A stretch of 64,000 nucleotides of DNA from IMG/VR virus record IMGVR_UViG_3300028666_000022, positions 62,001 through 126,000 of that record. One strand, written 5' to 3'. Shown here one piece after another: positions 19 to 60,468 of the stretch. Under the pieces are notes generated by a model. It had not been told where the DNA came from. It was given only the letters and a program-made list of their open reading frames with translations, and made no database searches. The position numbers were made by a program, and so were the translations under genes. Every line of letters begins with the position of its first letter. Positions within the stretch are counted from its first letter, which is position 1.

Positions 19-2794
19 ATGTTTGATACAATTGCTGTTTTAGTTAGATATTTTAAAGAAAATAAACCAAAGGGCAAAAGAACATGGAAAATTGTAGCAT
101 TTTGGGATACATATAATACTAGAGAATCTAAAATTGAAGAACCTGAGTTATCAGAATCAATTAGAAACGAAGCTTTAAATGAATTGTTTAAACTTTGTCA
201 AGTAAAGACATGGGCAGAATGGAAATCTAAATAAAGATATTATATGATTAATGATTATATTAGTTTAAATTATTGTTATAAAATTGATGGTGAAATTTAT
301 AGAAAATTAGATTTTGAACTAGAATTTTCGTTAAATGTTTATTTAACAAATTCGTTAATTAATCAATTGCGCATTGAATTTGATAATGATTTAACTTCTG
401 CTTTAATTAATGTAATGGAATAATTATGAAAACATTAATCAATTTTTTTAAAAATATTTTTTGTGACATTGTTATTTTCATTCCTGCTCCAAAACAAATT
501 TATTTTAAAATAAATACATTAAAAGATGTTCAACGGTATTTAAATAGTATTATATTCATCAACTCTGGTGGTTGTGGTATTGCTGCATTAGCAATGTTTA
601 AGTGGCTTAAGAAAAACAATTTGATTGAAGAAAATACAACTAATTTTGTATTTCTATATAAATCTGACGATGGAACAGACTATTTAAACAATTCCTCTGT
701 TTTAAAACAAAAATCAGGAATACCAGTAGCTCCAGCACATGTTATTTTATTTCATAAAGGTAATTATATTGATTCTGAAGGCATTGTTGAAGTTAACGAA
801 TATCATTGGTTGCAAAATGTTAATGAAGAAAACTTTGTTGTAAGAGCTAATAATAATTTATTCACATGGTGCGGTTTCTTTGATAGAAACAATATTAAAG
901 ATATTGAGAAAATGTTAGAAATTGATATGGACGATATTTTGATATTAAACTAAGAATGTAACAAAATAAAATTATTTTCGTATAATATTTAAACGATAAA
1001 AATAATCAATATGAAAATAGTATTAAATAAATGTATGAATATCAACGAAATGGTTAATACTGTTAGTTCTTTTTCTAATATTGATACTGCTTTAGATATT
1101 ATTAATAAATTTAAACTGAATGAAAAAGTTGTTTTAATTTGGCATAATAATAAACTTATATTAAAATAAATCATGGAAAAATTAACTGAATCTCAAGAAA
1201 ATAATCTTAAATGGTTAGAAGATTTTAGTGGAGCTGAAAAAGAAGTTACTTTTTCAGATGTTTCTAATATTAGTGATGCAATGAATAATATGTTTTTAAA
1301 CGCTTATCTATATTTTTCAAGCGAATTAGATTCTGAAGATAGAATTAATGAACTAATCGAAATATATAAATCAGGTTATAAATTAATTTTAAATGATTAA
1401 ATTATGAAAGCTATATTGAAAATCGGTGATACTATAAAAATATCAAATAAAAACAAAAATCATTCAGATAATGATGTTTGTGCCTATGCAAATATGTGTG
1501 GTGTTGTAACCAATATTTGGGAAGATAATTCCTTTGCTTTATGTTGTGGAAATTCAACATTAATTGTACCAATGCGAAATGCGTTTAAGAAAAAAATAAA
1601 GGGTATTTGGATATATTTAAATGAAGAATTATTATTTCATAAAAGCAAATAAATTATATGCAAGAATATATTACCACACATAAAAAAGAAAATAAAAACA
1701 AATATATTTATTTTACACAAAAAGTAGAATTAGGTATTGAGAATGAAATTGGTTATGAATTAATGTGGAGTGGTAAAGTTAGTAAAGAAGAATGGAATTG
1801 GTCACAAGAAATTGCTAATGAACAACCAAATAGAGTAATAATAAATGAAAATAATGTTATTTGTATAAAAAATTAAACATGACTGATTTACAAAATAAGA
1901 TATTAGAATTAATGAAATCTCAAGATGAATATGAAAAATGGGGATTTTGTTGTATGGGATATAGAGAAATTTCAAATATATTAAAACTAGAAGCTATATC
2001 AGTATCTAATTCAATGCGAACAATGTACAAAAAGGGTATATTAACTAATTATTATTGTAAAGATCAATATGATGATACCCATTATGAATTAAGAAACCCT
2101 AATTTTAAAAAATGATTTATGAAAACAAAAGAAGAAATTTATAAACAAATTGATAAGGCTATGGAAGCCATTAATGAAGGTGGAAAATTTAATGGAATGT
2201 CTTATGAAGATGGCGTAAAATATGCATTAGAATGGGTATGTGGTGATTCGGATGAAGAACCAATGCCAGAAGAAAATTAATGATAAAATAATTTTATTTT
2301 CGTATATTATTAAAAACATTATTATGAAAAATACCGAAAAAGCAATTGAATGGTGGAATAGTTTAGGTAATTTATATAAAAGAAAATTAACCACAGAACA
2401 TTTTGTTGGGAGAAGAGTTAATACATTATGTGATTCTGAAATTGAAGTAATTTATAATGACTTTAATAATTTTGATTTACCTGAAGATTGTACATCATTC
2501 AATGATATAATGTATGATTACAATAAAACAATTAAAATGAAAAAATATAATATTAATAATTATATAATAATTTACCCAAATGAAAGTGGTTGGAGGAAAA
2601 TTATTGAATTAACCCAATCACATTATGAATTAACTCAAGAAAAAGCAAATGATTGGGTTAATATTAGAAAAGAAAATGGTGGTTTTAAAGAACAATTATG
2701 GGTGTTAATTTCAATTTATTATGAAATGTTTTTCAATGGAGAAAAATATTTTAATACTGCAATAATTGATTTATGTGGTGAAGTTATTGAATAA
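19..2794 (+). CDS. Cluster of small hypothetical phage proteins (19..234, 426..953, 1173..1400, 1404..1652, 1658..1876, 1861..2115, 2240..2794)
   Basis: Tightly packed, co-oriented short ORFs with AT-rich leaders; no recognisable motifs. Confidence 0.6.
958..982 (+). promoter_or_regulatory. ECF-sigma-type promoter GTAAC-N16-CGTA (one of 9 copies)
   Basis: GTAAC at 958-962, exactly 16 nt, then CGTA at 979-982. Same spacing at 7019, 7413, 8350 (ATAAC) and 34721 on +, and at 23218, 23963, 27676 and 58048 on -. Confidence 0.75.
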
Positions 2795-2823: not shown

Positions 2824-3058
2824 AGAGTATGAAAATAATTAAATTTTCTTTATTGATCTTATGTCAATCGGCTGTACTCCTACAACCTCTACCTTATCTT
2901 ACCTAAGTATTTTAAGGTTACATTTATTAGCTATTATTTTTGATTCAATACTTTCGTATTGTCTTGCTAATTTGTTATTAACTTTTATGATTTTACATTA
3001 CCAAAGTATTAATTTAGGTAATAACCACAATATATCAAAGAACGTAAAGATAAATACT
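2824..3058 (-). ncRNA. Stand-alone TnpB omegaRNA-like cassette A (promoter, boxA-like element, structured leader, scaffold; guide read from 2823 downward)
   Basis: Minus strand encodes a TnpB C-terminal-like remnant (VEVVGVQPIDIRSIKKI*). Hairpins ACCTTA/TAAGGT, GGTTGT/ACAGCC and ATTGA/TCAAT plus pseudoknot GGAGTA/TACTCT parallel the tnpB 3' end at 4082-4187. Segment 2978-3058 is identical (81 bp) to 35945-36025. Confidence 0.7.
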
Positions 3059-3185
3059 GGAAATTATGAAAAAAGTAAATAAAAAGAAGCAGAATTTATT
3101 GCCAATATTAGAGCTGCAATACAAAATGAATTAGGCGAGGATGAGTTTAACATATTAATAAAACATAATTTAAAATATTAATACT

Positions 3186-3892: not shown

Positions 3893-4081
3893 AAAATTTT
3901 TCTAATTTATGTGGTTTATTTAAATAGTTTTAATATATTTACAAAATTTATTTTAACCTAAATAATAGAAAGGAAATTTGTGATGGAAGAAAATATTTGG
4001 AGTGAACTAAGATACGAAGAAACTGCTGAAAATATTGTTAATATTTTTGCTTGACTAACAGGTGAACTCGATGAAATTGGA
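3885..4081 (+). repeat. Diverged ~200-bp direct duplication flanking the IS607-like element (partner 6165-6359)
   Basis: The same intergenic region (atgaataaaa...tttaatatatttacaaaa...aatagaaaggaaa) and gene 5' end occur on both sides. Confidence 0.8.
3983..4081 (+). pseudogene. Truncated 5' copy of ORF 6261..6479, ending at the TnpB element right end
   Basis: MEENIWSELRYEETAENIVNIFA*LTGELDEIG vs MDENIWSELRYEETGENIINIFGWLTGELDETG; TGA at 4052-4054. Confidence 0.9.
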
Positions 4082-4190
4082 ACAGTACAAAATAATATAA
4101 TAATATTACTTCTTTATGATCGAAACCATTGGCGATACTGCAATCACCTCTATCCCATTATCAAACTCGATGTTTGGAATTGCTTTTCTT
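4082..4190 (-). ncRNA. omegaRNA scaffold overlapping the tnpB 3' end; predicted guide TCCAATTTCATCGAGTTCAC
   Basis: Hairpins ATTCCA/TGGGAT, GGTGAT/ATCGCC and ATGGT-TTCG-ATCAT; loop GCAGTA can pair with terminal TACTGT. Confidence 0.7.
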
Positions 4191-5440
4191 AATATATTTA
4201 AACTCCCGTTTAAATCTGCATTTATCAATTTCTTTGATTTTGATCTATATAAACCCCTATAAATTCTTCTACCACTAAATTTATGTTTATTAATATCATT
4301 GTCTTCAATACCAATATTATTATTTTCACATTTTTTATCTTTCTTTTTATACACTGGTATCTCATCTTCATCTATAAAACTAGCCTTACTCGTATAACTT
4401 TCTTCCTGTATTAAGACATTTATACCAAGTAATTTAGCCTTATATTCTAACATCCATATAAACCTACTGTGTGGTATGCCTACAAATTTTTGATTACTCT
4501 CCTTGCCCATATTTATCTCTTGCTTCCACTCCTTATTATTACCAATTATTAAGGTATTAATATTGTTGTCAACTAAATGATTAATAATATATCGACTTGC
4601 TTTATGCAAATAATCATCAACTTTGTTATTCCTTTTATTTGTTAAATTCTTAATTCTATTGCTTGTCCCATATTGTTGTTTTTCTCCTTTCTTATTTATA
4701 TAATGATTTAAATCTGATTTGTAATGAGCTAAATTTTTATTATAATATTGATTAATACTTTTTAATGGTTTACCATTAATAATTATTGATTTAATTACAT
4801 TACTACCTATTGTTGCTAAATTATTTAAACCCAAATCAATACTAGCATACCTATTATTATTTGGCTTTAACTCAACTTCTTTTACTTCATATAATACTTC
4901 AATTACATAATGATTACCTTTTGGTATTACTCTACATTGCTTAATATTTTTAGAATTTATTTTAGTTTTAACCCTAATATTAGTTCTCGATAATTTAACT
5001 ATATTATTTTTTAATTCTTTTTTCGATATAGCATCTAATGTATAAATCAACATAAATCTACCATTTATCTTATCTTTATAATTGGGTAATTCAGGCTTAC
5101 CTTTATATTTAGATTTATTTTTATTATAATCCTTAATAGAAGCAAAGAAAGATTTCCAATTTTTATCTAATTGCATTAGGGTTTGATTTGATATTTTTCT
5201 AGGTAATTGTATATAATCAATATCATTAGAATCAATCATTAATCTATTAATATCATAATAATTTAAATAATTAGCATGATCAACTAAACCTAATTTTTTC
5301 TCATTACTTGTTTTAATAAATTCTTGTCTGATTATATAATTAGCTTTATTGTAAAGGTTTTTACTAAGAAAACATAGTTTATCAATTTCAATAAAATATT
5401 GATTAGATTTTTTAATTATATGTTTTTCTGTTAAAATCAC
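4106..5440 (-). CDS. tnpB: RNA-guided endonuclease TnpB (IS607-associated; rearranged RuvC-II type)
   Basis: SIDLGLNNL (RuvC-I); IIGNN with downstream QEESYTSK; INADLNGSLNI (RuvC-III). Confidence 0.92.
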   Translation of the reverse strand: MILTEKHIIKKSNQYFIEIDKLCFLSKNLYNKANYIIRQEFIKTSNEKKLGLVDHANYLNYYDINRLMIDSNDIDYIQLPRKISNQTLMQLDKNWKSFFASIKDYNKNKSKYKGKPELPNYKDKINGRFMLIYTLDAISKKELKNNIVKLSRTNIRVKTKINSKNIKQCRVIPKGNHYVIEVLYEVKEVELKPNNNRYASIDLGLNNLATIGSNVIKSIIINGKPLKSINQYYNKNLAHYKSDLNHYINKKGEKQQYGTSNRIKNLTNKRNNKVDDYLHKASRYIINHLVDNNINTLIIGNNKEWKQEINMGKESNQKFVGIPHSRFIWMLEYKAKLLGINVLIQEESYTSKASFIDEDEIPVYKKKDKKCENNNIGIEDNDINKHKFSGRRIYRGLYRSKSKKLINADLNGSLNILRKAIPNIEFDNGIEVIAVSPMVSIIKK

Positions 5441-5479: not shown

Positions 5480-6058
5480 TTAGTTTTCAATGAATTGTTT
5501 TATTTCTTCCTTATTCTTCTTTCTCCTTAAGCCATATATCCTTTCTGAAAATGAATAAAATATACTAATTAAATCATTTAGTAAATCTTCTTTATCTTCA
5601 TTTACTTGATTTATTACTAATATTTGTTTTCCTTTTAACTTAAGTAATAATTCAATATAATTAAAACCAAATCTTGTTAATCTATCTTTATTTTCAACAA
5701 TAATCATATTCCAATCATCTCTAACCAATATTTTATTTAATTTAGGACGATTATCATTCATACCTGAAGCAATTTCTTTAATTTCATCAATAATGATATA
5801 CGCATTTTTTGTTGCAAAATCACGTATTCTATTTAATTGATTATCCAATTCTAATTTCTTGTCATTATTAGAAACTCTAGCATATAAAATTACATTGGTT
5901 TGATTATTAATTTCAGGAAATAAGGGTATTTTAACATGGTTGGTTTCATCTAAGAAAGCACCTTTAATTTTACCAGCAACAAATCTATTCCAAGCTGTTT
6001 TATAAGTAACTGAATTTTCTCTTGCATATTCGGATAATTTTTTATATATTTGTTTCAT
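5480..6058 (-). CDS. tnpA: IS607 transposase (HTH + serine recombinase)
   Basis: N-terminal HTH, ILYARVS, EIASG, VENKDRLTRFGF, FSERIYGLR. Confidence 0.92.
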   Translation of the reverse strand: MKQIYKKLSEYARENSVTYKTAWNRFVAGKIKGAFLDETNHVKIPLFPEINNQTNVILYARVSNNDKKLELDNQLNRIRDFATKNAYIIIDEIKEIASGMNDNRPKLNKILVRDDWNMIIVENKDRLTRFGFNYIELLLKLKGKQILVINQVNEDKEDLLNDLISIFYSFSERIYGLRRKKNKEEIKQFIEN

Positions 6059-6260
6059 GAATAAAATGTTTTATATTTGTATATATAAATACTATTAATG
6101 TAGAAAAAGTTTATATAAATTTCAATAATTTTACATATTAATTATAATTAGTTTAAAATATGTAATGAATAAAATTTATAATTAATGTGTTTTAATTTAA
6201 AAATTTTTAATATATTTACAAAAATTATTTTAATTTAAACAATAGAAAGGAAAGTGAGTC

Positions 6261-6479
6261 ATGGATGAGAATATTTGGTCAGAATTACGTTATGAAGAAA
6301 CTGGTGAAAATATTATTAATATTTTTGGTTGGTTAACAGGCGAACTAGATGAAACAGGAATTGCTATTATTGAAATCAATGTTTTAACTGGTTTTGTAAC
6401 TTATCTTGATGAAAGAGCTAAAGACGATTTATACGCTCAGGAAGCAGTTCAAGAAGTTTTTGATATTTACGGTTTATAA
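6261..6479 (+). CDS. Hypothetical protein (intact copy of the gene truncated at 3983-4081)
   Basis: ORF track; paralog alignment. Confidence 0.8.
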   Translation: MDENIWSELRYEETGENIINIFGWLTGELDETGIAIIEINVLTGFVTYLDERAKDDLYAQEAVQEVFDIYGL

Positions 6480-6676
6480 TAATATCTATTTATGAAAAAT
6501 TTAATTAATTTTATTTTCTTTAGATGGAGTAAGTGGGAAGTGTATATACCTAACATTACTGAAACAGTTGGATTATTTCCCGAAAAAAAAGTTGTTGTTG
6601 ATATTTACGTAAAAACAAATATCTATACAGGATTAAAAAAATATAAAAGAGTTGTTAAATATCGAATTAGGCCAGA

Positions 6677-7030
6677 ATGAAATCCCTTACTCAAGAAATT
6701 CTTAATGAATTTGTTCTTGATTTAAAGAAGAATCGATTCAAAGATATTATCAAAGATCTTAAAATAGATTTGTCTTCTAATGAAGACAATACAGAATACA
6801 TTTATCTAGGTTTAATCATTCTTAGGAAAAAAGAAAGACATAAGGGATATGGTTCATTAATCATGAAAGAAATTATATCTTTAGCAAACGAATATAATCT
6901 TCCAATTAAGTTATACTCAACAGCAGCTTATGGTTCAAAGATTGATAAACTAAATGAATTTTATAATAAACATGGTTTTGTTTTAGATAATTTAATGTTG
7001 TGTTATTTTCCAAAAATTGTAACAAAATAA
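6677..7030 (+). CDS. GNAT-family acetyltransferase
   Basis: RHKGYGS motif A; FYNKHGF motif. Confidence 0.75.
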   Translation: MKSLTQEILNEFVLDLKKNRFKDIIKDLKIDLSSNEDNTEYIYLGLIILRKKERHKGYGSLIMKEIISLANEYNLPIKLYSTAAYGSKIDKLNEFYNKHGFVLDNLMLCYFPKIVTK

Positions 7031-7993
7031 ATTAATTTTCGTATAATTTTTAATTTAAAATTAATAAATGAATAATATAAAATATATTGAACCCAATAAA
7101 AGCTTAATGGGGCGAATATTTAGATTTTTTGGTATTGAATTAAACACTAAATTCAATGATGGATATTTTCATACATTTGGTTATTCTGGAAAACAAAAAA
7201 ATAATAAAAGAGATATTATCATAATAGAAAAATTAGATGGAAATGTCATTAGTATACCTAACAATAAAAAATATTATACGTTTCAGAATAATTTTATTTA
7301 TAGTGGACACATTAAAAATATTGAAAAGACTATAGATAATAAACATAACACATTATTTTTAAATGAAAAAATAAGTGTTAATTGGGACGCATAAATTATT
7401 TTTAAAGAATTAGTAACAAATTAGATTAATTTTCGTAATATAAACTATAATCAACAAAACAATAAAATTTATGAAAAAAGAACAACAATGTAAAATATGT
7501 AATAATAAAAAACTAATTGAAGTATTGGTTATGGGAACGGATGTTGATTGGGTGGAATGCCCATATTGTTCGAATAAATCAGAATATATTAAATTTCAAA
7601 ACTCAGTTAATTAATAATCTTATGAAAGAATTAGAAATATCAATTAAGATCCTAAAGGAAGATAAAACAGAATTAGAATGTAAACTTTATTATTTCTTTA
7701 GAAATGGAAGAGTTCCAGATGATAATGAATATTATGAAATGATGGAATTATTAGAAAATTGGTCAATAATAAAATCAAATATTAAGTGTGTCGAAGATAT
7801 TCAAAAAACAATTATTAATAATATTTAGAATATGATAATTTACACTGAAGCAACAATCAACTACATGGCTAACTTGGGTTTAAACAACGAAATTCAAGTT
7901 ATTTTAGCTAATAGTGTGGTAAAAGAAACTGAAAAATTAAAGGTTAAATATGTTGTAATGAATGAAATTCCCGAAACAATTTAGTTTGAAATC

Positions 7994-10351: not shown

Positions 10352-10570
10352 ATGAAAAAGAAGTTTAATAAAATTATGGAAGATTTAAAAAATAAAAATC
10401 TAATTGTTGTTCGAGTTAATAAAATAGAATTTGAATTAGATAATGGAGATATTTATCCTATCCCATTCGAATTAGATGTTGATGAAAATATTACTCTCGA
10501 AGAATTTCAAAAAATATTAAATGATTCAAAAGATGATATTATAAAAATACTTGATAAATATAATGAGTAA
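10352..10570 (+). CDS. Small protein upstream of tnpA, inside the element
   Basis: ORF overlapping the tnpA start. Confidence 0.6.
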   Translation: MKKKFNKIMEDLKNKNLIVVRVNKIEFELDNGDIYPIPFELDVDENITLEEFQKILNDSKDDIIKILDKYNE

Positions 10571-11189
10571 ACTATTATCATTACAAAAAGTATCAGAAAT
10601 ATTGGGTGTAACTAAGAAAACATTAAGAATATGGGATAATGATGGTAAATTAGTTAGTATTAAAACTATTGGTGGTCATAGAAGATATAAAGAAGATGAT
10701 GTTAATAAATACATCGGTGAATATGTTGAAGTTAATATTAATAATGTTTTAACATATAGTAGAGTAAGTAGTCATGAACAAAAAACCAAAGGAGATTTAG
10801 ATAGACAATCACAAAGAATAAGTGAATATTGTGCTAAGAAAAAATACAAAGTAGAATATATTATTAAAGATGTTGGTTCAGGACTATCAGATACAAGAAG
10901 TGGATTTGTTAAAATGGTTGATTTGGTAATTAAGAGAAAAATTAATAAAGTAATCATTGAAAATAAAGATAGATTAACCAGATTTCAATTTAATTTAATT
11001 AAAGTATTTTTTAATAGTTATGATGTGGAAATTGAATGTATTGAAAATACGAATATATCAAATGAAGAAGAATTTGTAAATGATATAATGATGTTAATGG
11101 CAAGTTTTTCTGGTAAATTATATGGTAAGAGAAGTGTGAAACGTAAAAAAGAATTAAAAGAACAAAAATTAAAAGATAAAAATTTTTAA
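10551..11189 (+). CDS. tnpA: IS607 transposase (MerR-like HTH + serine recombinase)
   Basis: LGVTKKTLRIWD...GGHRRY, YSRVSS, DVGSGL, ENKDRLTRF, SFSGKLYG. Confidence 0.93.
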   Translation: MINIMSKLLSLQKVSEILGVTKKTLRIWDNDGKLVSIKTIGGHRRYKEDDVNKYIGEYVEVNINNVLTYSRVSSHEQKTKGDLDRQSQRISEYCAKKKYKVEYIIKDVGSGLSDTRSGFVKMVDLVIKRKINKVIIENKDRLTRFQFNLIKVFFNSYDVEIECIENTNISNEEEFVNDIMMLMASFSGKLYGKRSVKRKKELKEQKLKDKNF

Positions 11190-11205
11190 AACGATACTAA
11201 TTATT

Positions 11206-12003
11206 ATGAAATTAATTCAGAAATATTTAAAAACCGATGATGAGATTGAATTATTAAGAGAGAGTAATTTATTAGTATCAAAAACACTTGCAGAAATTGC
11301 TAAAAATATAAAAGTTGGCGTTTCTACACTTTATCTTGATAAAATTGCTGAAGAGTTTATTATGGATAATAATGCAATACCTGCTTTTAAAGGATATAAT
11401 GGATTTCCAAATACATTATGTACATCAGTAAATGATGAAATAATTCATGGAATTCCATCTGATTATATTTTGAATGAAGGTGATATAATATCGGTTGATT
11501 GTGGTGTGATATTAAATGGATGGTATGGAGATAGTGCTTATACGTTTCCTGTTGGTAAAATTTCAAAGGAAATACTGCAATTATTGGTATATACTAAAGA
11601 ATCTCTTAAAGAAGGAATAAAAAAAGCAATCATAGGAAATAGAATTGGTGATATTTCTTATGCAGTTCAAACTAAAGTAGAAAGTGGTGGATATAGTGTT
11701 GTAAGAGAAATGGTTGGTCACGGTATTGGAAGAAATCTTCATGAAGAACCTAATATTCCAAATTATGGTAAGCAAGGAACGGGAATAAAACTTGAAAAGG
11801 GACTTGTAATATGTATTGAACCAATGATAAATCTTGGAAAAAGAGAAATGTTGTTAATGAAGGATGGATGGACAATAAAAACTGCTGATGGAAAACCTTC
11901 AGCACATTTCGAAAAAGCAATTGTGATTCACAAAGAAAAAGCAGATATATTAACAAATTTTGATTTTATTGAAAAAATTTTAGATAATAATGAAAATAAT
12001 TAG
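11206..12003 (+). CDS. map: Type I methionine aminopeptidase
   Basis: CTSVNDEIIHGIP, SVDCG, GDSAYT, GHGIG..HEEP, CIEPM, SAHFE. Confidence 0.95.
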   Translation: MKLIQKYLKTDDEIELLRESNLLVSKTLAEIAKNIKVGVSTLYLDKIAEEFIMDNNAIPAFKGYNGFPNTLCTSVNDEIIHGIPSDYILNEGDIISVDCGVILNGWYGDSAYTFPVGKISKEILQLLVYTKESLKEGIKKAIIGNRIGDISYAVQTKVESGGYSVVREMVGHGIGRNLHEEPNIPNYGKQGTGIKLEKGLVICIEPMINLGKREMLLMKDGWTIKTADGKPSAHFEKAIVIHKEKADILTNFDFIEKILDNNENN

Positions 12004-13126
12004 GTCAACTAAATGTAGTTTGAAGTTTTCTACTAAAAAGAAAATAAATGATTTGTCAACTATATTAGCAGAATATGCTAAAGTGGTTAATATTTTCATA
12101 AATTATTTTTGGTTAAATCCTGACAATACAAATAAAAATAAATTATTAAAAGAAATAGTTGATTTACCTTCAGAAACATGGTTGAGTGCAAGATTAAGAA
12201 AAGTGGCAGCAAGAGAAGCGATTGATATGATAAATGCATCTAAATTAAGATGGAAAAATAAAGCAGTAATTCCTGTTCATAAAGGAAATAGGATGTATGT
12301 TAGTTGTACCATTGCTGACTTAGTTCCTACTAAAAACACTAATTATAAAACTGAAGAAAGTCTTAGATTCGATGCTTGGTTGCATATACAATCAATTGGA
12401 AATAAAATGATAATGGATTTACCAATTAAATATCATAAACATTTTAATAAGTATAATAATATAGGTAAAAGATTAAACTCATACATAATAACAAAGAATT
12501 ACGTTCAGTTTAGTTTTGAAATTAATACACAACCTAAGAAAGAAGGTAAGAAATGTATTGGTATAGATACTGGTATTAACGCACTTGCTAGTTTGAATAA
12601 TGGTAATCAATATGGAAAAGATATTAAGGAATGTATTGAAAGAGTAAAAAGATGTCAACAAAAATCAAAAGGATGGTATGTTGCTAAAAGAGCATTAAAA
12701 CAGCGTATTGATGAAGTAGTAAAAGAATTAATGATAAAAGAGAATCCTGATTTAATAGTTGTGGAACGACTAAAGAATATGGGAGTTAAATCAAAAGCCA
12801 AACGTTTATTGGCTAAAAATATTAGACGTTCTATTGGAACATGGAACTGGAAGTATTGGTTAAAAAGGTTAGAAGGATATTGCGAAATTAACCGTGTTAG
12901 TTTTCGTTCGGTATTACCTTATTATACCAGTACAACTTGTCCTGTATGTGGTCATTCTGATAGGGGAAACCGAAATGGAAAGATATTCTTATGTCTTAAA
13001 TGTGAACACAAAGACAATGCTGATATAAATGCAGGAAAGAATATTTTAAATCGGTTTCTTATGGGACTCTACGGTGTCCATTACAAAGAATGTGAAGATG
13101 TACAATTTTGTGCAACTTTAGTTTAA
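11990..13126 (+). CDS. tnpB: RNA-guided endonuclease TnpB
   Basis: GIDTG, VVERL, TSTTCPVC...CLKC zinc ribbon, NADINAGKNI. Confidence 0.9.
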   Translation: MKIIRSTKCSLKFSTKKKINDLSTILAEYAKVVNIFINYFWLNPDNTNKNKLLKEIVDLPSETWLSARLRKVAAREAIDMINASKLRWKNKAVIPVHKGNRMYVSCTIADLVPTKNTNYKTEESLRFDAWLHIQSIGNKMIMDLPIKYHKHFNKYNNIGKRLNSYIITKNYVQFSFEINTQPKKEGKKCIGIDTGINALASLNNGNQYGKDIKECIERVKRCQQKSKGWYVAKRALKQRIDEVVKELMIKENPDLIVVERLKNMGVKSKAKRLLAKNIRRSIGTWNWKYWLKRLEGYCEINRVSFRSVLPYYTSTTCPVCGHSDRGNRNGKIFLCLKCEHKDNADINAGKNILNRFLMGLYGVHYKECEDVQFCATLV

Positions 13127-23187: not shown

Positions 23188-23230
23188 ATTATTAATATTA
23201 TTAAGTTAAATATATTATACGTAATTAATT

Positions 23231-23926
23231 TTATTTTGTTACAACTAGTTTACATTTTATTAAAAATCTTAAAAAATTTAAATAAGCAAATAATCTTCTA
23301 AATCCTTTTAAATTTGATTTTATTTTGTAAGTGAAATACAATTCATAAATTAATTGAAAATAATTAGGTAATCTTGTTTGAATTAAATCCCATGCCATTG
23401 CATCAGCACCTTCTTCACTATTATCATTATTAAGTTTTATTGAGAAATGATGTCCTATTTCATGGAAAAATGTTCCATAATAATATTTAATATTATAAAA
23501 TCTATCTTCAATTGAACATAATAATATTTTGGGATAGTGAAGTTCTTCTTTTATTATATTACTTTCATAATTTGCTAATTTACAAATTTCTTCATATGTT
23601 TTATGGTATTTCTTTTCAAGATCATTTATTTGTTTCAATGTTTTATTTAATGAATTTAAATATTCGACATCTGTAACATAAATATATTTTCCCAATGCTT
23701 TATTATCTTCATTAGAAATATTAATATTTAATTCATCGTATGTTTTAATAAAAACAGAAATATTTTCTTTTTTACAAATATTTATTGCAGTTTTTTCTAA
23801 TACCTCGATTAATGAAGGATATTTTTTAAAATCAAATAACAATATAAATATATTAAATTGTATTATATATAAAAATATTAGAGAAATTAGTAACAAAACA
23901 AATAATGTAATCATTGTTAGTATCAT
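23231..23926 (-). CDS. Membrane-anchored HExxH metallopeptidase-like protein
   Basis: N-terminal hydrophobic helix; FFHEIGH...SEEGAD. Confidence 0.6.
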   Translation of the reverse strand: MILTMITLFVLLLISLIFLYIIQFNIFILLFDFKKYPSLIEVLEKTAINICKKENISVFIKTYDELNINISNEDNKALGKYIYVTDVEYLNSLNKTLKQINDLEKKYHKTYEEICKLANYESNIIKEELHYPKILLCSIEDRFYNIKYYYGTFFHEIGHHFSIKLNNDNSEEGADAMAWDLIQTRLPNYFQLIYELYFTYKIKSNLKGFRRLFAYLNFLRFLIKCKLVVTK

Positions 23927-23983
23927 AATTTTAATGTTAAATTGTTTATACTATCTGTAATATACGTAAATAGATTTATTTTG

Positions 23984-24505
23984 TTACAATTTTTTAATTA
24001 ACTTTTCTTTTAATTTCCATATTCGTAAACATCCTAATGTAGCAACTTTTAATTTTTCTTCAGTAGTTAATTTCCTACACTCTTTAATTCTACTTGCTTC
24101 TTTATCTATTCTAGCAAAACATCTACCATTTTCATATTTACTACATGTTATTATTCCAGCATCTTCTGGAATAAATTCAATACTTTTCTCTAATAGTTCA
24201 ATAGGTATTGCATAGTATAACTTGCTTATTCTATTTTGTTTATCTTTGTGGTTGTGTCGTTTTTTAAAATCTGCCTTAAGATCAGAAATACTTCTTTTAA
24301 TTTCTACTTCAATAGCGAAACCAGATTTCATAATTATAAAAAGATCGGTTTCATGCATTCCTACTAGTCCCCATGAAATATTTGGTACTATTATATGAGT
24401 TCTTATTCCAAACAGTTTAGAAATAGCTACCTCCATTTCAATTAATGAAATGGTTTTAGATTTAATGATATTTGATTTTCTTTTTATTCCCATTTCACTC
24501 ATCAA
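23984..24505 (-). CDS. PD-(D/E)XK nuclease-like protein
   Basis: ETDLF...EVEIKRSISDLKADFKK. Confidence 0.65.
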   Translation of the reverse strand: MMSEMGIKRKSNIIKSKTISLIEMEVAISKLFGIRTHIIVPNISWGLVGMHETDLFIIMKSGFAIEVEIKRSISDLKADFKKRHNHKDKQNRISKLYYAIPIELLEKSIEFIPEDAGIITCSKYENGRCFARIDKEASRIKECRKLTTEEKLKVATLGCLRIWKLKEKLIKKL

Positions 24506-26845: not shown

Positions 26846-28195
26846 ACTGCTAAATTATCATTAGATTCATCACTAGCTTTAATTACCCAAATAAAAAATA
26901 TACAAATTCCAGTTATCCACCATTGGTAATGATTTGTAAATCCACCAATAAATGTTACAATAACTACAACTAATAGTAGTGTAACTAATTTGTTTTTTAA
27001 AAACCATTTCATAATAATATGTTTTATATTAATACTATTCTTTATTTAACCAATGAACTACTGGCTCATGTCCTTCTTCAACACCAAATTCTTTTAAATA
27101 ATTATTATATGTTTGATCCCATTCATCGATGCTATACCACCATCCTTCAGGTAAAAACATTTTAGCTGCAGCATCTGCTTCTTCATGTGTTTGGAATACA
27201 AAGGTTTCTTCGCACATCAATACTGTAATTAAAAGTGGTTTAAAACCTGCTTGGATTATTTCTTTTAGAAGATCACTTTTTGGTGTGCCATAAGTATATT
27301 CTTCTTGTTCATTAATTGGAAAATTATTTTCCATAATACAACTCATCATTAAGTAGTTGAAAATTTCTCTCTGCTGTTTTTAATTTAAACATAAGATTAT
27401 TTATTTCATCTTCAAGCCTAGAATATTCATTTATTATAATTTTCTTAAATTCAGGATCTGTCGATTTAATCACCTTTGTTTCAAAATCACCATCTTCTTT
27501 CATCCATTTTGGTATTTCAAAATGAATTGCATCACCGATGTTTGATGAATAAGTAGCAGCAGAATTAGCCTGTTTATATGAATTATAACCACTATCTTTA
27601 ATTAGATATCTTATGGAATATTTCTGATATTTTTCTTGATTTGTCATAAAACTAATTTATTTAAAATAATAATAATACGAACAATAATTCATTTTGTTAC
27701 AAAATTGAATTTATATTTTCATGTCCATCGGTCTAAATTTAACTCTTCCAAACCAGCACAACATCTCATAGCATTTACTATCTCAAGCCATTCTGATTGT
27801 AAACCTTTACTAACCAATATTTCTTTTACAATTTTAAGATCATTTAATGATTTCTTAAAATTTATCTGATTTTCAACATTAAGCCAATCCACTCCTTTAG
27901 AAAAACAATAAATAGGTGTTTTTTCTGTCAGAGGTTCTCCACAAATTTCATCTTCATATAGAAGTTTTGCTGCATTTAATACTTTTTCTGAAGTCATAAT
28001 TAATTATTTTAAATATTATATAAACAATTTTTTTCTAACAAATTACAAATGTAAGCAAAAATAACCAAATTTACAAGTATTTATAAAAAAATATCTAAAT
28101 ACTTGCAAATTTCAAAAATTATTCAGATCTTTGCAAAAACATATCATATAAACGTATGATATTTCTCATAAAAATAACCTAATAAAAAAAATCTT

Positions 28196-34771: not shown

Positions 34772-35770
34772 ATGAAAAAGATTTTAATTATATTATCAGT
34801 TCTTTTGTTTACATTTACTGGATTTTCACAATCAAGTATATTTCTAAACAAAATTTCTGATACTGAATTATCCCAAGCATATACAACAACCTTTTATGAA
34901 GGTCATCAAAGAAAATATAATAAAACCATTGAAGATTTTATTCAAGAATTTATTCAAGAATATGGTAAAGATGAATTAAATCTAGTTCTTTCTAAAATAG
35001 AAGATAATACACTTGACGATTATCTTAAATCTATTGATGATAAAGAATTAAATTTTGAAATAATTGCACTTAATTACGTTCTATTGAATAAACTTTCATT
35101 TGTTTCAAATGGTAAAATTTTTGTACTTACTTATGAACCAATAAAAAGTAGAAAATCATTTGATAGGGACTTAGATATTATTAGTGAAAAAAATTTATAT
35201 CTTTATCGTAGAGATGATGATGGTTGGAAAAAAGCATCTGATTTAATTAGAGTTGATTTCTTTTCTGATGTTTCGAGTAGAGAAGTAGATTATCATACTA
35301 CACATTTCAATGATGGTGAAGAAGTATTTTCTCCATATAGGTTGGGTTTCGGTATTGTTAAAAAGACTTCAAATAATTGGGTTTACATTACTTTTAAAAC
35401 AATATCTTGGCATTCTAATGTTGGTTATCAGAATTATAATTCAATATTAGTTTTAGTTCCCAAAGATAATAAAGAATATAATATATCTTTATTTGAACCA
35501 GAAAATAAGATTGGTAAAATAATTAAAAGATATCCTCTAAAGGTTTATAATTATAGTAATCAAATTTGGAATGAATATTTAAAAGACATAAATCTACCAG
35601 TATTATATGGTTTAAGTAAAATAGAATATGTTGAAATAGATAATGGTTTAACAATAAATTATTTCGATGGTAATAAAAATAAACCAATTACTGCGGGAAC
35701 ATTAAAATTCGAAAAGATTGATAATCAGATTATTTGTAGTGGTACAATTAAAATGAATAAAATTAAATAA
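34772..35770 (+). CDS. Secreted hypothetical protein
   Basis: Signal peptide MKKILIILSVLLFTFTGFSQ; promoter copy at 34721. Confidence 0.7.
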   Translation: MKKILIILSVLLFTFTGFSQSSIFLNKISDTELSQAYTTTFYEGHQRKYNKTIEDFIQEFIQEYGKDELNLVLSKIEDNTLDDYLKSIDDKELNFEIIALNYVLLNKLSFVSNGKIFVLTYEPIKSRKSFDRDLDIISEKNLYLYRRDDDGWKKASDLIRVDFFSDVSSREVDYHTTHFNDGEEVFSPYRLGFGIVKKTSNNWVYITFKTISWHSNVGYQNYNSILVLVPKDNKEYNISLFEPENKIGKIIKRYPLKVYNYSNQIWNEYLKDINLPVLYGLSKIEYVEIDNGLTINYFDGNKNKPITAGTLKFEKIDNQIICSGTIKMNKIK

Positions 35771-35783
35771 ATCTCACACATGG

Positions 35784-36025
35784 ACAGTACGTAATAACAT
35801 ATAATTTATATTAACTCTTTATGGTCGAAACCATTGGCGATACTGCAATCACCTCTATTCCATTATCAAACCGATGTTTGGAATTGCTTTTATTAGCTAT
35901 TATTTTTAATTCAACATCTAAAAGATATTGTCTTGCTAAATTGTTTAACTTTTATGATTTTACATTACCAAAGTATTAATTTAGGTAATAACCACAATAT
36001 ATCAAAGAACGTAAAGATAAATACT
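35784..36025 (-). ncRNA. Stand-alone TnpB omegaRNA cassette B; predicted guide CCATGTGTGAGATTTATTTA
   Basis: 35816-35891 matches 4111-4187 (2 substitutions + 1 loop indel); same ACAGTAC end; leader shared with cassette A. Confidence 0.8.
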
Positions 36026-36074
36026 ATAAATTTTGAAAATTTTAAATAAATTTATATAAAAATTATAATAAGTT

Positions 36075-42552: not shown

Positions 42553-42581
42553 TTAAACACTATTAAATCAAATTATTTTTG

Positions 42582-42654
42582 AGCAGGGAGTTGGATTCGA
42601 ACCAACATCTCAACACTGGAGGTGTAAAGCATTAACCAATTATGCTATCTCTGC
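42582..42654 (-). tRNA. Atypical tRNA-Gly(TCC) or pseudo-tRNA
   Basis: GCAGAGA acceptor; GCAT/ATGC D arm; GTTGG-TTCGAAT-CCAAC T arm; loop CCTCCAG; U discriminator. A-C and U-U mismatches and C33. Confidence 0.7.
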
Positions 42655-46206: not shown

Positions 46207-47124
46207 TCAATTATTTATATTACCACTTTTAATATGTCTATTAGTATATGAACAAAGTGGTTGAAGATTAGTATAATGATTTAATTTAATTATATCTTCT
46301 TCTGTTTTTGCTGTTGATAATGGTATGATATGATCAAGATCCCATGCAGTATTTATTTCTGTTGGATAACCATTCCAATTACCATAATTTGACCAATTCA
46401 TCCAAGGTTGAAATAATTTCTCAATATGATTTTTAAATTCTTCAAAACTACAATCTAAAATTGTTTCAGTTTTTGATGTTTTTGCATAACCCATTCTTTT
46501 TATTGATGTTGATATTAAAGATCTAATGGTAATTGTTAATTTATATTGTATGTCTTCTGATTTTCTTTTCTTTTTATATTCTTTATTATATAATTTTTTC
46601 TTTTCTTTATTTTTTAAATTATATTTTTTTGTGGTATTAATATATTTATTTCTATTCTCTTTAGTTTTTTTACTAATTTTCTCTTTATTATTAAAATAAT
46701 ATTCAGATCGTTGGTTTTTTATTTTTTCTTTGTTTTCTTCATGATATTCTTTCTGATATTCATCAATTTTCTCTTTATTTTTTTCGACATATTTTTTATT
46801 TTTTAAAATAATTTTTTCTTTATTGGTTTCATAATACTCTTTATTTTTTTCAACAATTTCGTCATGATGATCATTATAGCGTTTATTACTACGTTTTTTT
46901 ATTGTTTCTTTGTTTCCAACATAATACTTAGCTAATTTCTTTTTTAATTTTTCTTTGTTTTTTTGAGCATACTCTTTTTTATATTCTGATATTTTTTCTT
47001 TATTCTTCTCACAATATTCTTTATTATATTCTTTTCCTAGTTGTTTCAATTTTTCCTTATTCTTTTCACGATATTTTTTATTATATTCTTTATCGTATTG
47101 TGCTTTTTCTTCTTTTGATTTCAT
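46207..47124 (-). CDS. HNH-type homing endonuclease with Lys-rich repeats
   Basis: Repeated Y.EKNKEKI; WDLDHIIPL...NHYTNLQPL..N..K. Confidence 0.8.
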   Translation of the reverse strand: MKSKEEKAQYDKEYNKKYREKNKEKLKQLGKEYNKEYCEKNKEKISEYKKEYAQKNKEKLKKKLAKYYVGNKETIKKRSNKRYNDHHDEIVEKNKEYYETNKEKIILKNKKYVEKNKEKIDEYQKEYHEENKEKIKNQRSEYYFNNKEKISKKTKENRNKYINTTKKYNLKNKEKKKLYNKEYKKKRKSEDIQYKLTITIRSLISTSIKRMGYAKTSKTETILDCSFEEFKNHIEKLFQPWMNWSNYGNWNGYPTEINTAWDLDHIIPLSTAKTEEDIIKLNHYTNLQPLCSYTNRHIKSGNINN

Positions 47125-58017: not shown

Positions 58018-59181
58018 CTTATTTTAAATTTAATTATTTACTTAATATACGTAAACATATCTTATTTGTTACAAATTATTTTAATATAATCCCAACGATT
58101 TAAACCAATTATTAATCCAATCAATTCTGTATCCCCATTTACCCGAAATAATATATTTAATTGGCATTCCAATAAGTAAGATTAACATAAAAATCAATGC
58201 AAATGGTAATGTAAATCTAATTATTAATGGTGTTTCAATCTTTTCTTTTTTATAAAATTCTAAATCAGAACCACGTAAACGATCGACAATATCATCGGCA
58301 TTACATTTCTTTAATTCAGGTATTCTATTTTGTAATTCAAATGCAACTGAATTATAATCTATTCTTCTTTGTTTAAAATAAAATGACATAATATTATTTA
58401 TTTAATAATTCTATTGAACAATCATTATACCCTAATTTATATGCATAATCTAATGAAATTTTAAATGTTTCAATAAATTCATTTGAAAAATCTTCACCAA
58501 TACTCAAACGATATTTACCTATATCAAAAACATATTTCCCATCAGCTATAGTAAGTTTAATTGGTGTTTCAACAATTATTACACCTTGTAAAATTTCATT
58601 TTCTTTCATAATATTAAATTTAAATAATTATCATTAAAACTTCTTTTCTCCTTCTAAGAAAGGAAAAAACATAATCAACCTATTCATAAATGCAGGTGGA
58701 ACTATTACAAAATTTCTTCCTAGTTTTAGGTGTTGCTGTTGTAATTCGTTGAAAATCCTAACAACAGTTTGTTTTAATGCACTATCATCAACTACATTAG
58801 AATCCATAACATCTGAACTATTTGAACCATTTTTTAACCTTTGATTTTCAGCAAAAATTTTAGCATAATTTTCTTTTGCTTCACCTAATTCAGTCCTCAA
58901 TAATTCCATTTCTGAAGATAATGCTTCTACCTGTTCTTGTAACCAAGAATTATCATTTAATTGAGTACTTGAAGCCACTTCAGATTTTTCCTGTTCCTTA
59001 ACCTTTTCATTTGGATTCAATGGTATGTCCTCCAATAATTTTGCTACTGTTTCTTTAGCTTTTAAATCACGTTCTTCTTCAGGAGTAGTTTTTTTCACTA
59101 CCTTCTTTACTTCTACTTTTTTAACTACTGGAACAACGGCTTTTTTAGCACCTTTGGCTAAACTCATTAATTTGTTTTCTT

Positions 59182-60468
59182 TCATAATATAATTATTTTT
59201 AATTCTTTTAATTTATTTTCTAAATACTCTTCAATATTTTTTACTTTATATGATATTCTAATTAATCTTATATTTTTCTTTTTACAATAATCATTTTTTA
59301 TTTTATCATTAGCTTGTCTTAATTTTAACCCTTTTTCTCCACCAAAAAAATTTATAGCCATAAAATGTTGTCTACCATCAAATTCAATTAATACGTTATA
59401 ATTATTAAGATAAAAATCAAATGATAATTTTTGTTTATTTTTACAATCGTCAAATTTTTTTTGTTGTTCAAAATTAAAATTATTTTTAGCTAAAAAATTT
59501 TTTATTGTTAACTCACCCCTAGAACTACTACAAATTGAACATCCATTACCACTTAAATGACTGTGTGGTGTTTGTAAAAATTCTCCATGAATAGGACAAA
59601 TAATTTTTAATTTTTTATTTGATGATATATATTCTGTTTTAGAATAATCATATTTATTATTATGTATAATATTTGCTTTTTCAATAAAAAAATTAATGTT
59701 TGTTTTTGATCCAGAACATAATGAACATCCATTAGTTCTTAAATGAGAATTTGGTATTTGTTCAAATATTCCATGAATCGGACATTTAATTTTTACTTTA
59801 ATATTTGCACTAATATAATTAGTTTCCGAATAATCATATTTATTATTATGAACAATATTTGCTTTGTTTATGAAAATTTCAGTGGTTTTTTTAATTTTAT
59901 CACTACATTTTGAACATCCATATCCAGTTAAATGACCAGATGGTAATTGTTCAAATATTCCATGAATTGGGCATTTAATTTTTACTTTGATGTTTGCACC
60001 AATATAATTTATCTCTGAATAATCAAATTTATTGTTATGAATAATATTTGCTTTTTTAATAAATTCACTAGTATTAGATTTTTCTGTACCACCACATTTT
60101 GGACATCCATCTCCTATTAAATGATCATTTGGTCTTTGAATAAACTCTCCGTGTGTTGGGCAAATAATTTTTACTTTAGTTTTATTTTGTTTATATTCAA
60201 CTAATGAATAATCATACTTATTTTTATGAATAATTTTTGCTTTTTCAATAAATTCATTAGAATTAGATTTTATATTACCCGCACATTTTGGACATCCTCT
60301 ACCATCTAAATGATCGTTTGGTGTTTGTTCAAAAACATCATGTTTTAAACAAATAATTTTAACTTTAGTAGAACTATTAACATAATTAACAAAAGTATAT
60401 TCATATTTATTTTTATGAATATACTTTGCTTTTTTTATAAACTCTTTTGTTGTTAATTTTTTACCCAT
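59182..60468 (-). CDS. Homing-endonuclease-like protein with five Zn-ribbon repeats and a C-terminal PD-(D/E)XK/Vsr-like domain
   Basis: 5x FI.KA..IH.NKYDYS...IC..HG.F.Q.P..HL.G.GC..C; FDFYL..IEFDGRQH..DKIK. Confidence 0.85.
   Translation of the reverse strand: MGKKLTTKEFIKKAKYIHKNKYEYTFVNYVNSSTKVKIICLKHDVFEQTPNDHLDGRGCPKCAGNIKSNSNEFIEKAKIIHKNKYDYSLVEYKQNKTKVKIICPTHGEFIQRPNDHLIGDGCPKCGGTEKSNTSEFIKKANIIHNNKFDYSEINYIGANIKVKIKCPIHGIFEQLPSGHLTGYGCSKCSDKIKKTTEIFINKANIVHNNKYDYSETNYISANIKVKIKCPIHGIFEQIPNSHLRTNGCSLCSGSKTNINFFIEKANIIHNNKYDYSKTEYISSNKKLKIICPIHGEFLQTPHSHLSGNGCSICSSSRGELTIKNFLAKNNFNFEQQKKFDDCKNKQKLSFDFYLNNYNVLIEFDGRQHFMAINFFGGEKGLKLRQANDKIKNDYCKKKNIRLIRISYKVKNIEEYLENKLKELKIIIL

What the first reader, a model, noticed from the sequence alone, without database searches (positions are those of the whole stretch)
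35764..36025. Cassette B: near-identical omegaRNA with a new guide and RNA-level conservation
SEEN: against 4111-4187 there are three differences. Two convert G-U pairs to Watson-Crick pairs (ATCAT>ACCAT, TGGGAT>TGGAAT). The third is a 1-nt loop deletion that breaks the TnpB frame. Only 13 nt (atctcacacatgg) separate the scaffold end from the stop of the convergent gene, and I found no match to this guide in the window. INFERENCE: a functional trans guide for TnpB 4106..5440 aimed at a target outside this window.
Basis: partly seen in the sequence, partly recalled or inferred. Interest (0 to 1): 0.8.

Follow-up and report, generated by a model that had tools for sequence, protein, structure and literature searches.

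The report
Gene-less guide-RNA cassette in jumbo phage
Cassette B is a protein-less leftover of an IS607-type jumping gene in a 340-kb soil phage; it keeps a complete, correctly folding copy of the guide-RNA scaffold used by the phage's TnpB nuclease, a kind of element already proposed for bacteria, and its activity is untested.

Summary
B 35815-35890 differs from 4111-4187 by two substitutions and one 1-nt deletion. Both substitutions turn G·U pairs into Watson-Crick pairs, and the deletion breaks the TnpB frame.

The shared unit is larger than reported: a ~108-nt, four-hairpin omegaRNA domain ending in GUACUGU (B 35891->35784, A 4191->4082). It is conserved with strong covariation at the 3' ends of 25 related tnpB genes. 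A covariance model built without B or C finds only A, B and a third locus C (2824-2926) in the window.

The rest of the reported interval (35892-36050) is not TnpB-derived. It is a non-coding 5' module 89% identical to locus C. It carries a motif that lies upstream of the first gene, near the left end, in this IS family.

B is therefore best read as a gene-less, mosaic IS607-family derivative (PATE/MITE-like) whose omegaRNA could only work with TnpB 4106..5440 in trans.

The "guide" is simply the DNA flanking the right end. I found no other target in the window, in IMG/VR or in 185,579 genomes. Under the established model it matches the cassette-free allele of its own site, not a programmed external target. 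Expression, TnpB binding and mobility remain untested, and B's left junction is non-canonical.

The parts
35764..35783 (-). Putative guide: the DNA flanking the right end (CCATGTGTGAGATTTATTTA). It overlaps the stop codon and last codon of gene 34772..35770 and contains the hexamer ATGTGT (35781->35776).
   Evidence: A, B and C have unrelated flanks after the conserved ...ACT(G/C)T end.
35784..35891 (-). omegaRNA scaffold domain of cassette B: H1 35857-35884, H2 35836-35853, H3 35821-35834, H4 35795-35813, tail ...GUACUGU 35784-35794.
   Evidence: CM R1 62.9 bits, E 4.5e-13. Same four-hairpin fold as A, C, L005, L006, L025 and L027. Two substitutions and a 1-nt deletion vs A in H1-H3.
35892..36050 (-). 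Non-coding 5' module shared with locus C. It holds the left-end-type motif AGTATTTATCTTTAC (36011-36025), promoter-like hexamers TTGATA/TAAATT (35978-36005), a long hairpin (35952-35997) and hairpin H0 (35912-35930).
   Evidence: 88.8% identical to 2927-3083, central ~80 nt identical. No TnpB-coding remnant. Motif; promoter scan; folds.
4082..4191 (-). Cognate omegaRNA domain at the right end of the intact IS607-family element (locus A). Its guide starts at 4081 (TCCAATTTCATCG...).
   Evidence: 63.7 bits.
4106..5440 (-). tnpB (444 aa), the only nuclease of this family in the window; RuvC D202/E347/D409 conserved.
   Evidence: Pfam OrfB_IS605 + Cas12f1-like_TNB; NCBIfam guided_TnpB 159.8 bits, cut-off 100; invariant columns in A5.
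5480..6058 (-). tnpA, IS607-family serine transposase (192 aa).
   Evidence: NCBIfam transpos_IS607 150.8 bits, cut-off 110; Pfam Resolvase.
6059..6138 (-). Left end of locus A, with the motif AGTATTTATATATAC (6079-6093) and the junction hexamer ATATGT (6138->6133).
2824..3083 (-). Locus C, a second gene-less cassette: a diverged omegaRNA domain (2824-2926, ends CAUACUCU) plus the same 5' module (2927-3083). Its flank/guide starts at 2823.
   Evidence: CM R1 44.6 bits, E 2.3e-8. Four hairpins, which I count as carrying at least 7 two-sided compensatory changes vs A (read). No protein-level similarity to TnpB.

Best explanation
Cassette B is a gene-less, non-autonomous derivative of the IS607-family element whose intact copy (tnpA 5480..6058, tnpB 4106..5440) lies 30 kb away in the same jumbo-phage genome. 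It joins two parts. One is a non-coding 5' module (36050->35892) carrying the family's left-end-type motif and a promoter-like site. The other is a complete right end, i.e. the four-hairpin omegaRNA scaffold (35891->35784). Transcription on the minus strand would give scaffold plus flank (CCAUGUGUGAGAUUUA...). If TnpB from locus A loads this RNA in trans, the complex would cut DNA in which that flank is preceded by the family's TAM instead of the ...ACUGU transposon end. That DNA is the cassette-free allele of this intergenic site in sibling or co-infecting phage genomes, and cutting it would favour retention or copying of the cassette (homing). Shown: sequence, fold, family membership of the scaffold, absence of coding capacity, mosaic origin, intact catalytic residues in TnpB. 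Inferred: transcription, loading by TnpB, the TAM, cleavage, and the left-end nature of the 5' module.
For: The scaffold is as good as the cognate one (62.9 vs 63.7 bits) with a model built without B or C, and the model has only three hits in 64 kb. H1 and H2 covary across 25 relatives: 93% of cells are paired against 76% in shuffles, 51 double-change cells against 12, and slid controls reach at most 54%. All seven members that were folded show the same four hairpins. B's differences from A keep every stem while destroying the reading frame. H4 is 69% identical yet still a hairpin with the same GUACUGU end. The motif A[GC]TATTTAT lies 36-96 nt upstream of the first gene in L004, L005, L025 and L093 and also in locus A; it lies in the same orientation in B and C. 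B's 5' end aligns to A's left end at 39/50, the best non-self hit in the window. The B/C module has an ~80-nt identical core, and its H0 hairpin differs by structure-preserving changes. TnpA and TnpB of locus A look intact. The literature already proposes that PATE-like elements encode omegaRNAs used in trans by TnpB from other IS copies (10.1101/2023.03.14.532601).
Against: There is no expression data: no RNA run was listed. No cassette-free allele was found, since every contig with the identical neighbouring genes carries B. B's left junction lacks the dinucleotide expected from its right end. In five elements (A, L005, L006, L052, L076) the hexamer at the left junction, AT(A/G)T(G/C)T, ends in the same GT or CT as the right end ACT(G/C)T. 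B has ...ATATAA there, so TnpA-mediated excision, and a TAM at the empty site, are doubtful. The similarity of the 5' module to A's left end is marginal (18 of 500 shuffles score as high). The B-A near-identity could simply be recent copying. The promoter call is a weak consensus match, with fewer sites found than in shuffles.
Confidence: 0.5

Rival explanations
1. Inert relic. B is a decaying fragment left by deletion or recombination of former IS copies. It is neither transcribed nor used, and looks intact only because it is young or because AT-rich hairpins persist.
For: Only 3 differences from A in H1-H3, so little time for decay need have passed. The left junction is non-canonical. No empty site or mobility signal was seen. 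A clearly degenerate solo copy exists elsewhere (L093:2823-2906). There is no convincing promoter.
Against: H4 has diverged to 69% yet keeps a hairpin and the exact terminal motif. Locus C has lost all protein-level similarity but keeps all four hairpins through compensatory changes. The breakpoint between C-like and A-like sequence in B falls within a few nt of the 5' edge of the scaffold. The B/C module has a perfectly conserved 80-nt core flanked by diverged sequence.
Confidence: 0.3
2. One reading: a domesticated stand-alone guide RNA that programmes TnpB against a separate target (host, competing phage or plasmid) elsewhere.
For: An intact scaffold without its own nuclease. Two such cassettes (B and C) share one 5' module but have different scaffolds and flanks, which resembles a dedicated expression module. 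TnpB is catalytically intact.
Against: No match to the guide beyond itself: the window with up to 3 mismatches; IMG/VR, where seven 16-mer hits do not extend past 18 nt; GTDB genomes, with no 20-mer. The 'guide' overlaps the stop codon and last codon of the neighbouring gene, as expected for a plain insertion flank. The established model needs no external target.
Confidence: 0.07
3. The cassette matters as DNA or plus-strand RNA rather than as a guide. It could be a structured intergenic element (attenuator or mRNA-stabilising hairpins after genes 34772..35770 and 2240..2794) or a recombination substrate between B and C.
For: Both B and C sit directly after the stop codon of a plus-strand gene. 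Hybrid contigs join B's right side to C's left flank (X3 record 12).
Against: No terminator-like site was found. Conservation follows the minus-strand omegaRNA model, including G.U pairs that would be A/C mismatches on the other strand. The hybrid contigs can be assembly chimeras across an 80-nt identical repeat.
Confidence: 0.05

Closest known systems
PATE-like, protein-less IS200/IS605 elements that encode omegaRNAs (Meers et al., preprint 10.1101/2023.03.14.532601)
   Same: No ORF, a retained transposon end with an omegaRNA scaffold, a flank that serves as guide, and dependence on TnpB (and TnpA) supplied in trans by an autonomous copy in the same genome.
   Different: This one belongs to an IS607-type (serine transposase) element rather than a Y1/IS605 one and sits in a jumbo phage. 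Its left junction is non-canonical. It is a mosaic: a 5' module shared with locus C joined to a scaffold of locus-A type.
IS607-family TnpB omegaRNA, e.g. CboIStron (10.1101/2023.11.20.567912)
   Same: The guide RNA is encoded at the right end, overlaps the tnpB 3' end, and the guide is the flank. The transposon end resembles the target motif but differs at a discriminating position (there TCGG vs TGGG; here ACT(G/C)T vs AT(A/G)T(G/C)T, inferred).
   Different: Different scaffold (four hairpins, no Rfam match) and an AT-rich motif instead of a G-rich one. In B the scaffold is detached from any tnpB.
RAGATH-18-derived reRNAs of IS607 TnpBs (PMC11061315; only its abstract was seen)
   Same: A structured RNA associated with IS607-family TnpB genes.
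   Different: No match to RAGATH-18 or any other Rfam family, even at E up to 10.
Guide RNAs of domesticated TnpB relatives (TldR; 10.1101/2023.11.30.569447)
   Same: A guide RNA gene separated from transposon mobility.
   Different: The TnpB here keeps its catalytic triad and sits in an intact transposon. No target for the B guide was found. I did not read this paper in full.

Membership tests
omegaRNA of this TnpB subfamily (right-end guide RNA) | Matches the family's sequence/structure profile over its full length | tested here: met
   CM R1, built from 25 tnpB 3' ends without B or C: B scores 62.9 bits, E 4.5e-13, model positions 1-85 of 85.
omegaRNA of this TnpB subfamily (right-end guide RNA) | Conserved secondary structure supported by covariation | tested here: met
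   H1 and H2: 93.2% of cells paired, 9 of 13 pairs with two-sided changes, 0 of 500 shuffles reach the score, slid controls at most 54%. H3 and H4 were seen in all 7 folded members but not scored on an alignment.
omegaRNA of this TnpB subfamily (right-end guide RNA) | Overlaps or follows the 3' end of a tnpB gene | tested here: not met
   No TnpB-coding sequence lies upstream of 35891. Only the last ~22 codons are recognisable and they are frameshifted.
omegaRNA of this TnpB subfamily (right-end guide RNA) | Ends at the transposon right end, followed by a variable flank (guide) | tested here: met
   A and B both end ...GTACTGT and C ends ...CATACTCT. The flanks are unrelated.
omegaRNA of this TnpB subfamily (right-end guide RNA) | Transcribed, bound by TnpB, directs DNA cleavage next to a TAM | not testable with these tools
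   No RNA run was listed. This needs wet-lab work.
Non-autonomous (PATE/MITE-like) IS607-family element | Both transposon ends present, no ORF | tested here: inconclusive
   The right end is complete. The left-end-type motif is present and there is 39/50 identity to A's left end (18 of 500 shuffles score as high). No coding remnant was found. The expected junction ATRT-GT is absent: B has ATATAA.
Non-autonomous (PATE/MITE-like) IS607-family element | Autonomous partner supplying TnpA and TnpB in the same genome | tested here: met
   Locus A: transpos_IS607 150.8 bits and guided_TnpB 159.8 bits, both above cut-off.
Non-autonomous (PATE/MITE-like) IS607-family element | Several copies in different contexts, and presence/absence polymorphism | tested here: inconclusive
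   There are two cassettes with the module (B and C) in different contexts. No empty-site allele was seen in other samples. The rest of the 340-kb contig was checked only by exact words.
Domesticated stand-alone guide (CRISPR-like or TldR-like) | Guide matches a target other than its own insertion site | tested here: not met
Curated RNA families (Rfam 15, incl. RAGATH-18 and IS605-type motifs) | Reaches the family threshold | tested here: not met
   Only a tRNA passes in the window. Nothing meaningful appears at E up to 10 around A, B or C.

The most novel reading that the evidence does not exclude
The phage maintains a small set of stand-alone omegaRNA genes: one shared expression module fused exactly at the 5' edge of interchangeable scaffolds (B of locus-A type, C of another type). 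This would let one or a few TnpB nucleases act at several genomic sites, e.g. to exclude or convert co-infecting relatives. It would be a natural intermediate between a fixed-guide transposon nuclease and a multi-guide CRISPR-like system.
Probability: 0.12. Interest if true: 0.8.

Novelty: new member of a known kind. Interest (0 to 1): 0.4.

Why it matters
Gene-less transposon remnants that still encode a working guide RNA show that guide and nuclease can be uncoupled in nature, the step that had to precede CRISPR-type arrays. A phage carrying one intact IS607 TnpA/TnpB element plus two detached scaffolds with different flanks is a compact system for three tests: whether TnpB accepts guides in trans, how scaffold variants are discriminated, and whether such cassettes drive homing or marker exclusion between co-infecting phages. 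The work also defines an uncurated four-hairpin omegaRNA domain. It further predicts a crossover dinucleotide and TAM rule (left junction ATRT-GT/CT paired with right end ACT-GT/CT) for a TnpB subfamily with tblastn relatives in Lak megaphages, Bacillus phage G, and Staphylococcus and Nodularia phages.

Tried and rejected
- **Rfam.** A gathering-threshold scan of the window and E<=10 scans around A, B and C gave no omegaRNA/RAGATH family, only noise such as CRISPR-DR and DUF2693 at E>1.
- **GenBank phages.** No DNA match to the region or to the cassette.
- **Guide target.** Seven other 16-mer hits in IMG/VR, none extending beyond 18 nt. No 20-mer in GTDB genomes. No near match in the window.
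- **Host or donor of the scaffold.** The single 20-mer hit, in a Treponema MAG, lies inside an ORF and has no CM hit, so it is chance.
- **TnpB-coding remnant in the 5' module.** hmmsearch of all three frames finds only the last 22 residues in B and nothing in C.
- **Empty-site or excision evidence.** Laying contigs of four other rhizosphere runs showed no joints. Contigs encoding the identical neighbour proteins either carry the cassette or break at it. No relative of the neighbour gene exists in IMG/VR.
- **RNA evidence.** No RNA run was listed.
- **Conserved structure upstream of the scaffold inside tnpB.** RNAalifold finds none in 26 sequences, so I treat ~108 nt as the conserved scaffold.
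- **Generality.** 52 related loci yielded one degenerate solo copy, in L093. The first 50 kb of a Nodularia phage had only the tnpB-attached copy.
- **Solved structures.** No informative sequence relative of this TnpB.

Full report
**Context**

The window is bases 62001-126000 of IMGVR_UViG_3300028666_000022, a 339,898-bp viral contig from a rhizosphere metagenome. Its G+C content is 25%.

Locus A is an intact IS607-family element on the minus strand.
- tnpA is at 5480..6058. It matches NCBIfam transpos_IS607 at 150.8 bits, cut-off 110.
- tnpB is at 4106..5440. It matches guided_TnpB at 159.8 bits, cut-off 100.
- The RuvC residues D202, E347 and D409 are invariant in an alignment with six phage relatives.
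- tblastn finds relatives at 42-48% identity in Prevotella Lak megaphage, Bacillus phage G, and Staphylococcus and Nodularia phages.

**Observation check**

Between A 4111-4187 and B 35815-35890 there are two substitutions and one single-base deletion.

Folding shows that the substitutions lie in stems. A U·G pair in H1 becomes U-A, and a G·U pair in H3 becomes G-C. The deletion removes one base from the inner loop of H1 and shifts the remnant TnpB frame. The 13-nt spacing to the stop codon of the convergent gene 34772..35770 is right, and so is the absence of a second guide match in the window.

Two corrections are needed.
- Homology to A continues to the transposon end (A 4191->4082, B 35891->35784). 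The last ~30 nt is only 69% identical with indels, although both copies still form a hairpin and end in GUACUGU.
- The upper part of the interval (35892-36050) has no counterpart at locus A. It is 88.8% identical, with an ~80-nt identical core, to 2927-3083. I call that third locus C.

**The shared RNA**

I fetched 6 viral and 80 metagenomic loci encoding TnpB relatives at 38-56% identity. I then aligned the tnpB 3' ends of A and 24 subfamily members.

From the conserved AAAAGC the RNA forms H1 (a two-part stem), the motif AGAGG, then H2, H3 and H4, and ends in (A/U)ACU(G/C)U.

H1 and H2 covary strongly:
- 93.2% of cells are paired, against 76% in shuffles.
- 51 cells carry changes on both sides, against 12 in shuffles.
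- Controls with the 3' partner slid by 1-3 columns reach at most 54% paired.

The seven members folded one by one span roughly 25-55% G+C, and all give the same four hairpins. RNAalifold found no conserved structure further upstream inside tnpB, so I take this ~108-nt domain as the conserved scaffold.

A covariance model built without B or C hits only three places in the 64-kb window: A at 63.7 bits, B at 62.9 bits and C at 44.6 bits. The next hit scores 15.8 bits. In 52 related loci every hit lies at a tnpB 3' end, apart from one degenerate solo copy in L093. No Rfam family matches.

**Anatomy of cassette B**

B is a mosaic of two parts.

The 3' part (35891->35784) is a locus-A-type scaffold.

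The 5' part (36050->35892) is non-coding. hmmsearch of all three frames against a TnpB profile finds only the last 22 residues, which lie inside the scaffold. This module is shared with locus C.

Locus C's own scaffold (2926->2824) is only 62% identical to B's. It keeps all four hairpins; reading the folds, I count at least seven two-sided compensatory changes against A. It has no protein-level similarity to TnpB.

The breakpoint between C-like and A-like sequence in B falls within a few bases of the 5' edge of H1.

The 5' module contains AGTATTTATCTTTAC (36025->36011). The related word A[GC]TATTTAT lies 36-96 nt upstream of the first gene, on the gene's strand, in L004, L005, L025 and L093. 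It also lies in the left end of locus A, at 6093->6079. The word occurs only 31 times in 408 kb of related loci counted on both strands.

B's outermost 50 nt aligns to A's left end at 39/50. This is the best non-self hit in the window, but it is only marginally better than shuffles, 18 of 500 of which score as high. A weak promoter-like pair, TTGATA-16-TAAATT, lies in the identical core.

I therefore read B and C as left-end-plus-right-end miniature derivatives of IS607-family elements.

**Ends, crossover and TAM (inference)**

In five elements whose left boundary can be placed, the hexamer at the left junction ends in the same dinucleotide as the right end.

| Element | Left junction | Right end |
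|---|---|---|
| A | ATAT-GT | ACT-GT |
| L052, L076 | ATGT-GT | ACT-GT |
| L005, L006 | ATGT-CT | ACT-CT |

This is what a serine transposase that needs identical core dinucleotides would produce. It parallels the published TGGG (TAM) versus TCGG (transposon end) arrangement of the Clostridium botulinum IS607 element.

It predicts a TAM of about AT(A/G)TGT for TnpB of locus A. It also explains locus A as a canonical insertion.

B does not conform. At the expected left junction it has ...ATATAA, with no G or C for 36 nt. Either the junction has decayed or B did not arise by a simple TnpA insertion. C has ...GCTT-CT, which is compatible with its ACT-CT right end.

One unexplained detail: B's flank reads CC-ATGTGT-GAG..., so a perfect copy of the junction/TAM hexamer starts 2 nt into the putative guide.

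**Target and population evidence**

The 16-mer guide has seven other exact hits among 2.9 million viral contigs. None extends beyond 18 nt, which is no more than my rough estimate of chance matches. The 20-mer has no hit in 185,579 prokaryotic genomes.

Other samples contain the same phage. Every contig that encodes the identical neighbour proteins either carries the cassette unchanged or breaks at it. No joint skipping the cassette was seen, so no empty site is known.

One ENA contig (L106) and one Logan contig (X3 record 12) join B's right side to C's left flank, with the switch inside the identical core. This could be B/C recombination or an assembly chimera. No RNA run was listed.

**Interpretation**

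The best-supported reading (confidence about 0.5) is a gene-less IS607-family derivative. Its intact omegaRNA can act only with TnpB 4106..5440 in trans. Its guide is the insertion flank, so its natural target is the cassette-free allele of the same site in related genomes. That is the retention/homing logic shown for IS605 and IS607 elements.

The main rival (about 0.3) is an inert relic.

**Comparison and novelty**

The closest known things are PATE-like, protein-less IS200/IS605 elements. [quoted passage not shown]

B is the same kind of object, but in an IS607-type family and in a jumbo phage. It has a mosaic build and a non-canonical left junction. I rate it a new member of a known kind, of moderate interest. 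The more novel possibility is a shared expression module serving interchangeable detached scaffolds, i.e. a multi-guide use of TnpB. It remains open at low probability.

Noticed in passing
window 2824-3083 (-): Locus C is a second gene-less cassette. It has the same 5' module as B but a diverged omegaRNA domain (44.6 bits) ending CAUACUCU, and it lies right after the stop of gene 2240..2794. An exact-word scan of IMG/VR found no tnpB with a C-type right end.
   Followed up: partly
window 35776-35781 (-), inside the putative guide: The hexamer ATGTGT is identical to the left-junction/TAM-like hexamer of relatives L052 and L076, and L076's flank even reads CCATGTGT. It starts 2 nt after B's right end. 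By my rough estimate the chance is about 0.3% per locus. Its meaning is unknown: a preferred TnpA target region, or coincidence.
   Followed up: partly
A 6133-6138 / 4082-4088; L005, L006, L052, L076: The last two bases of the left-junction hexamer (ATRT-GT or ATGT-CT) always equal the last two bases of the right end (ACT-GT or ACT-CT). This predicts the crossover dinucleotide of the serine transposase and a TAM-versus-self discrimination like TGGG/TCGG in CboIS607.
   Followed up: partly
window 3915-4082 vs 6192-6360: The IS607 element is flanked by a diverged (79-89%) direct duplication: the promoter plus first ~100 nt of a small gene. The right-end side holds a truncated copy (3983-4081, with TGA where the full copy has TGG). 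The left-end side holds the intact gene 6262..6480. The locus-A guide is antisense to the truncated copy and differs from the intact copy at about 4 of 20 positions.
   Followed up: partly
L106:1615-2160 and run X3 record 12 (window 35489-36050): Contigs from two assemblers join B's right-end side and scaffold to locus C's left flank (gene 3186..). The switch lies inside the 80-nt identical core. This is either recombination or duplication between B and C (33 kb apart, same orientation) or an assembly chimera.
   Followed up: partly
window 10551-13126 (+): A second IS607-like unit of a different TnpB family: a serine transposase (10551..11189), an M24 methionine-aminopeptidase-like gene (11206..12003), then tnpB2 (11990..13126, overlapping it by 14 nt). 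A possible cargo gene inside an IS607-type element. Model R1 has no significant hit at or after the 3' end of tnpB2.
   Followed up: no
L093:2823-2906: A degenerate solo omegaRNA domain (36 bits, duplicated TAGAGGG, truncated after H3) is directly followed by the left-end motif TAGTATTTAT of a tnpB-only element. This suggests insertion of one element into the right end of an older one.
   Followed up: partly
window 945-1004, 7006-7059, 7400-7437, 23196-23250, 23945-23995, 27660-27702, 58043-58080: A recurrent ~35-nt intergenic motif, TTGTAACAAAATAAAttaATTTTCGTATAAT, on both strands. It is probably a phage promoter class (TTGTAA, 19 nt, TATAAT). It is absent from cassettes B and C.
   Followed up: no
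window 59530-60459 and 46669-47082: Tandem arrays: five copies of a 186-189-nt unit (65-76% identical) and a 45-nt periodic repeat. They are probably repeat-containing genes.
   Followed up: no
window 42581-42654 (-): tRNA-Gly (TCC), the only Rfam/ARAGORN hit in the window. In relatives L025 and L080 the sequence just upstream of the TnpB element looks tRNA-like by eye; I ran no tRNA scan on them.
   Followed up: no
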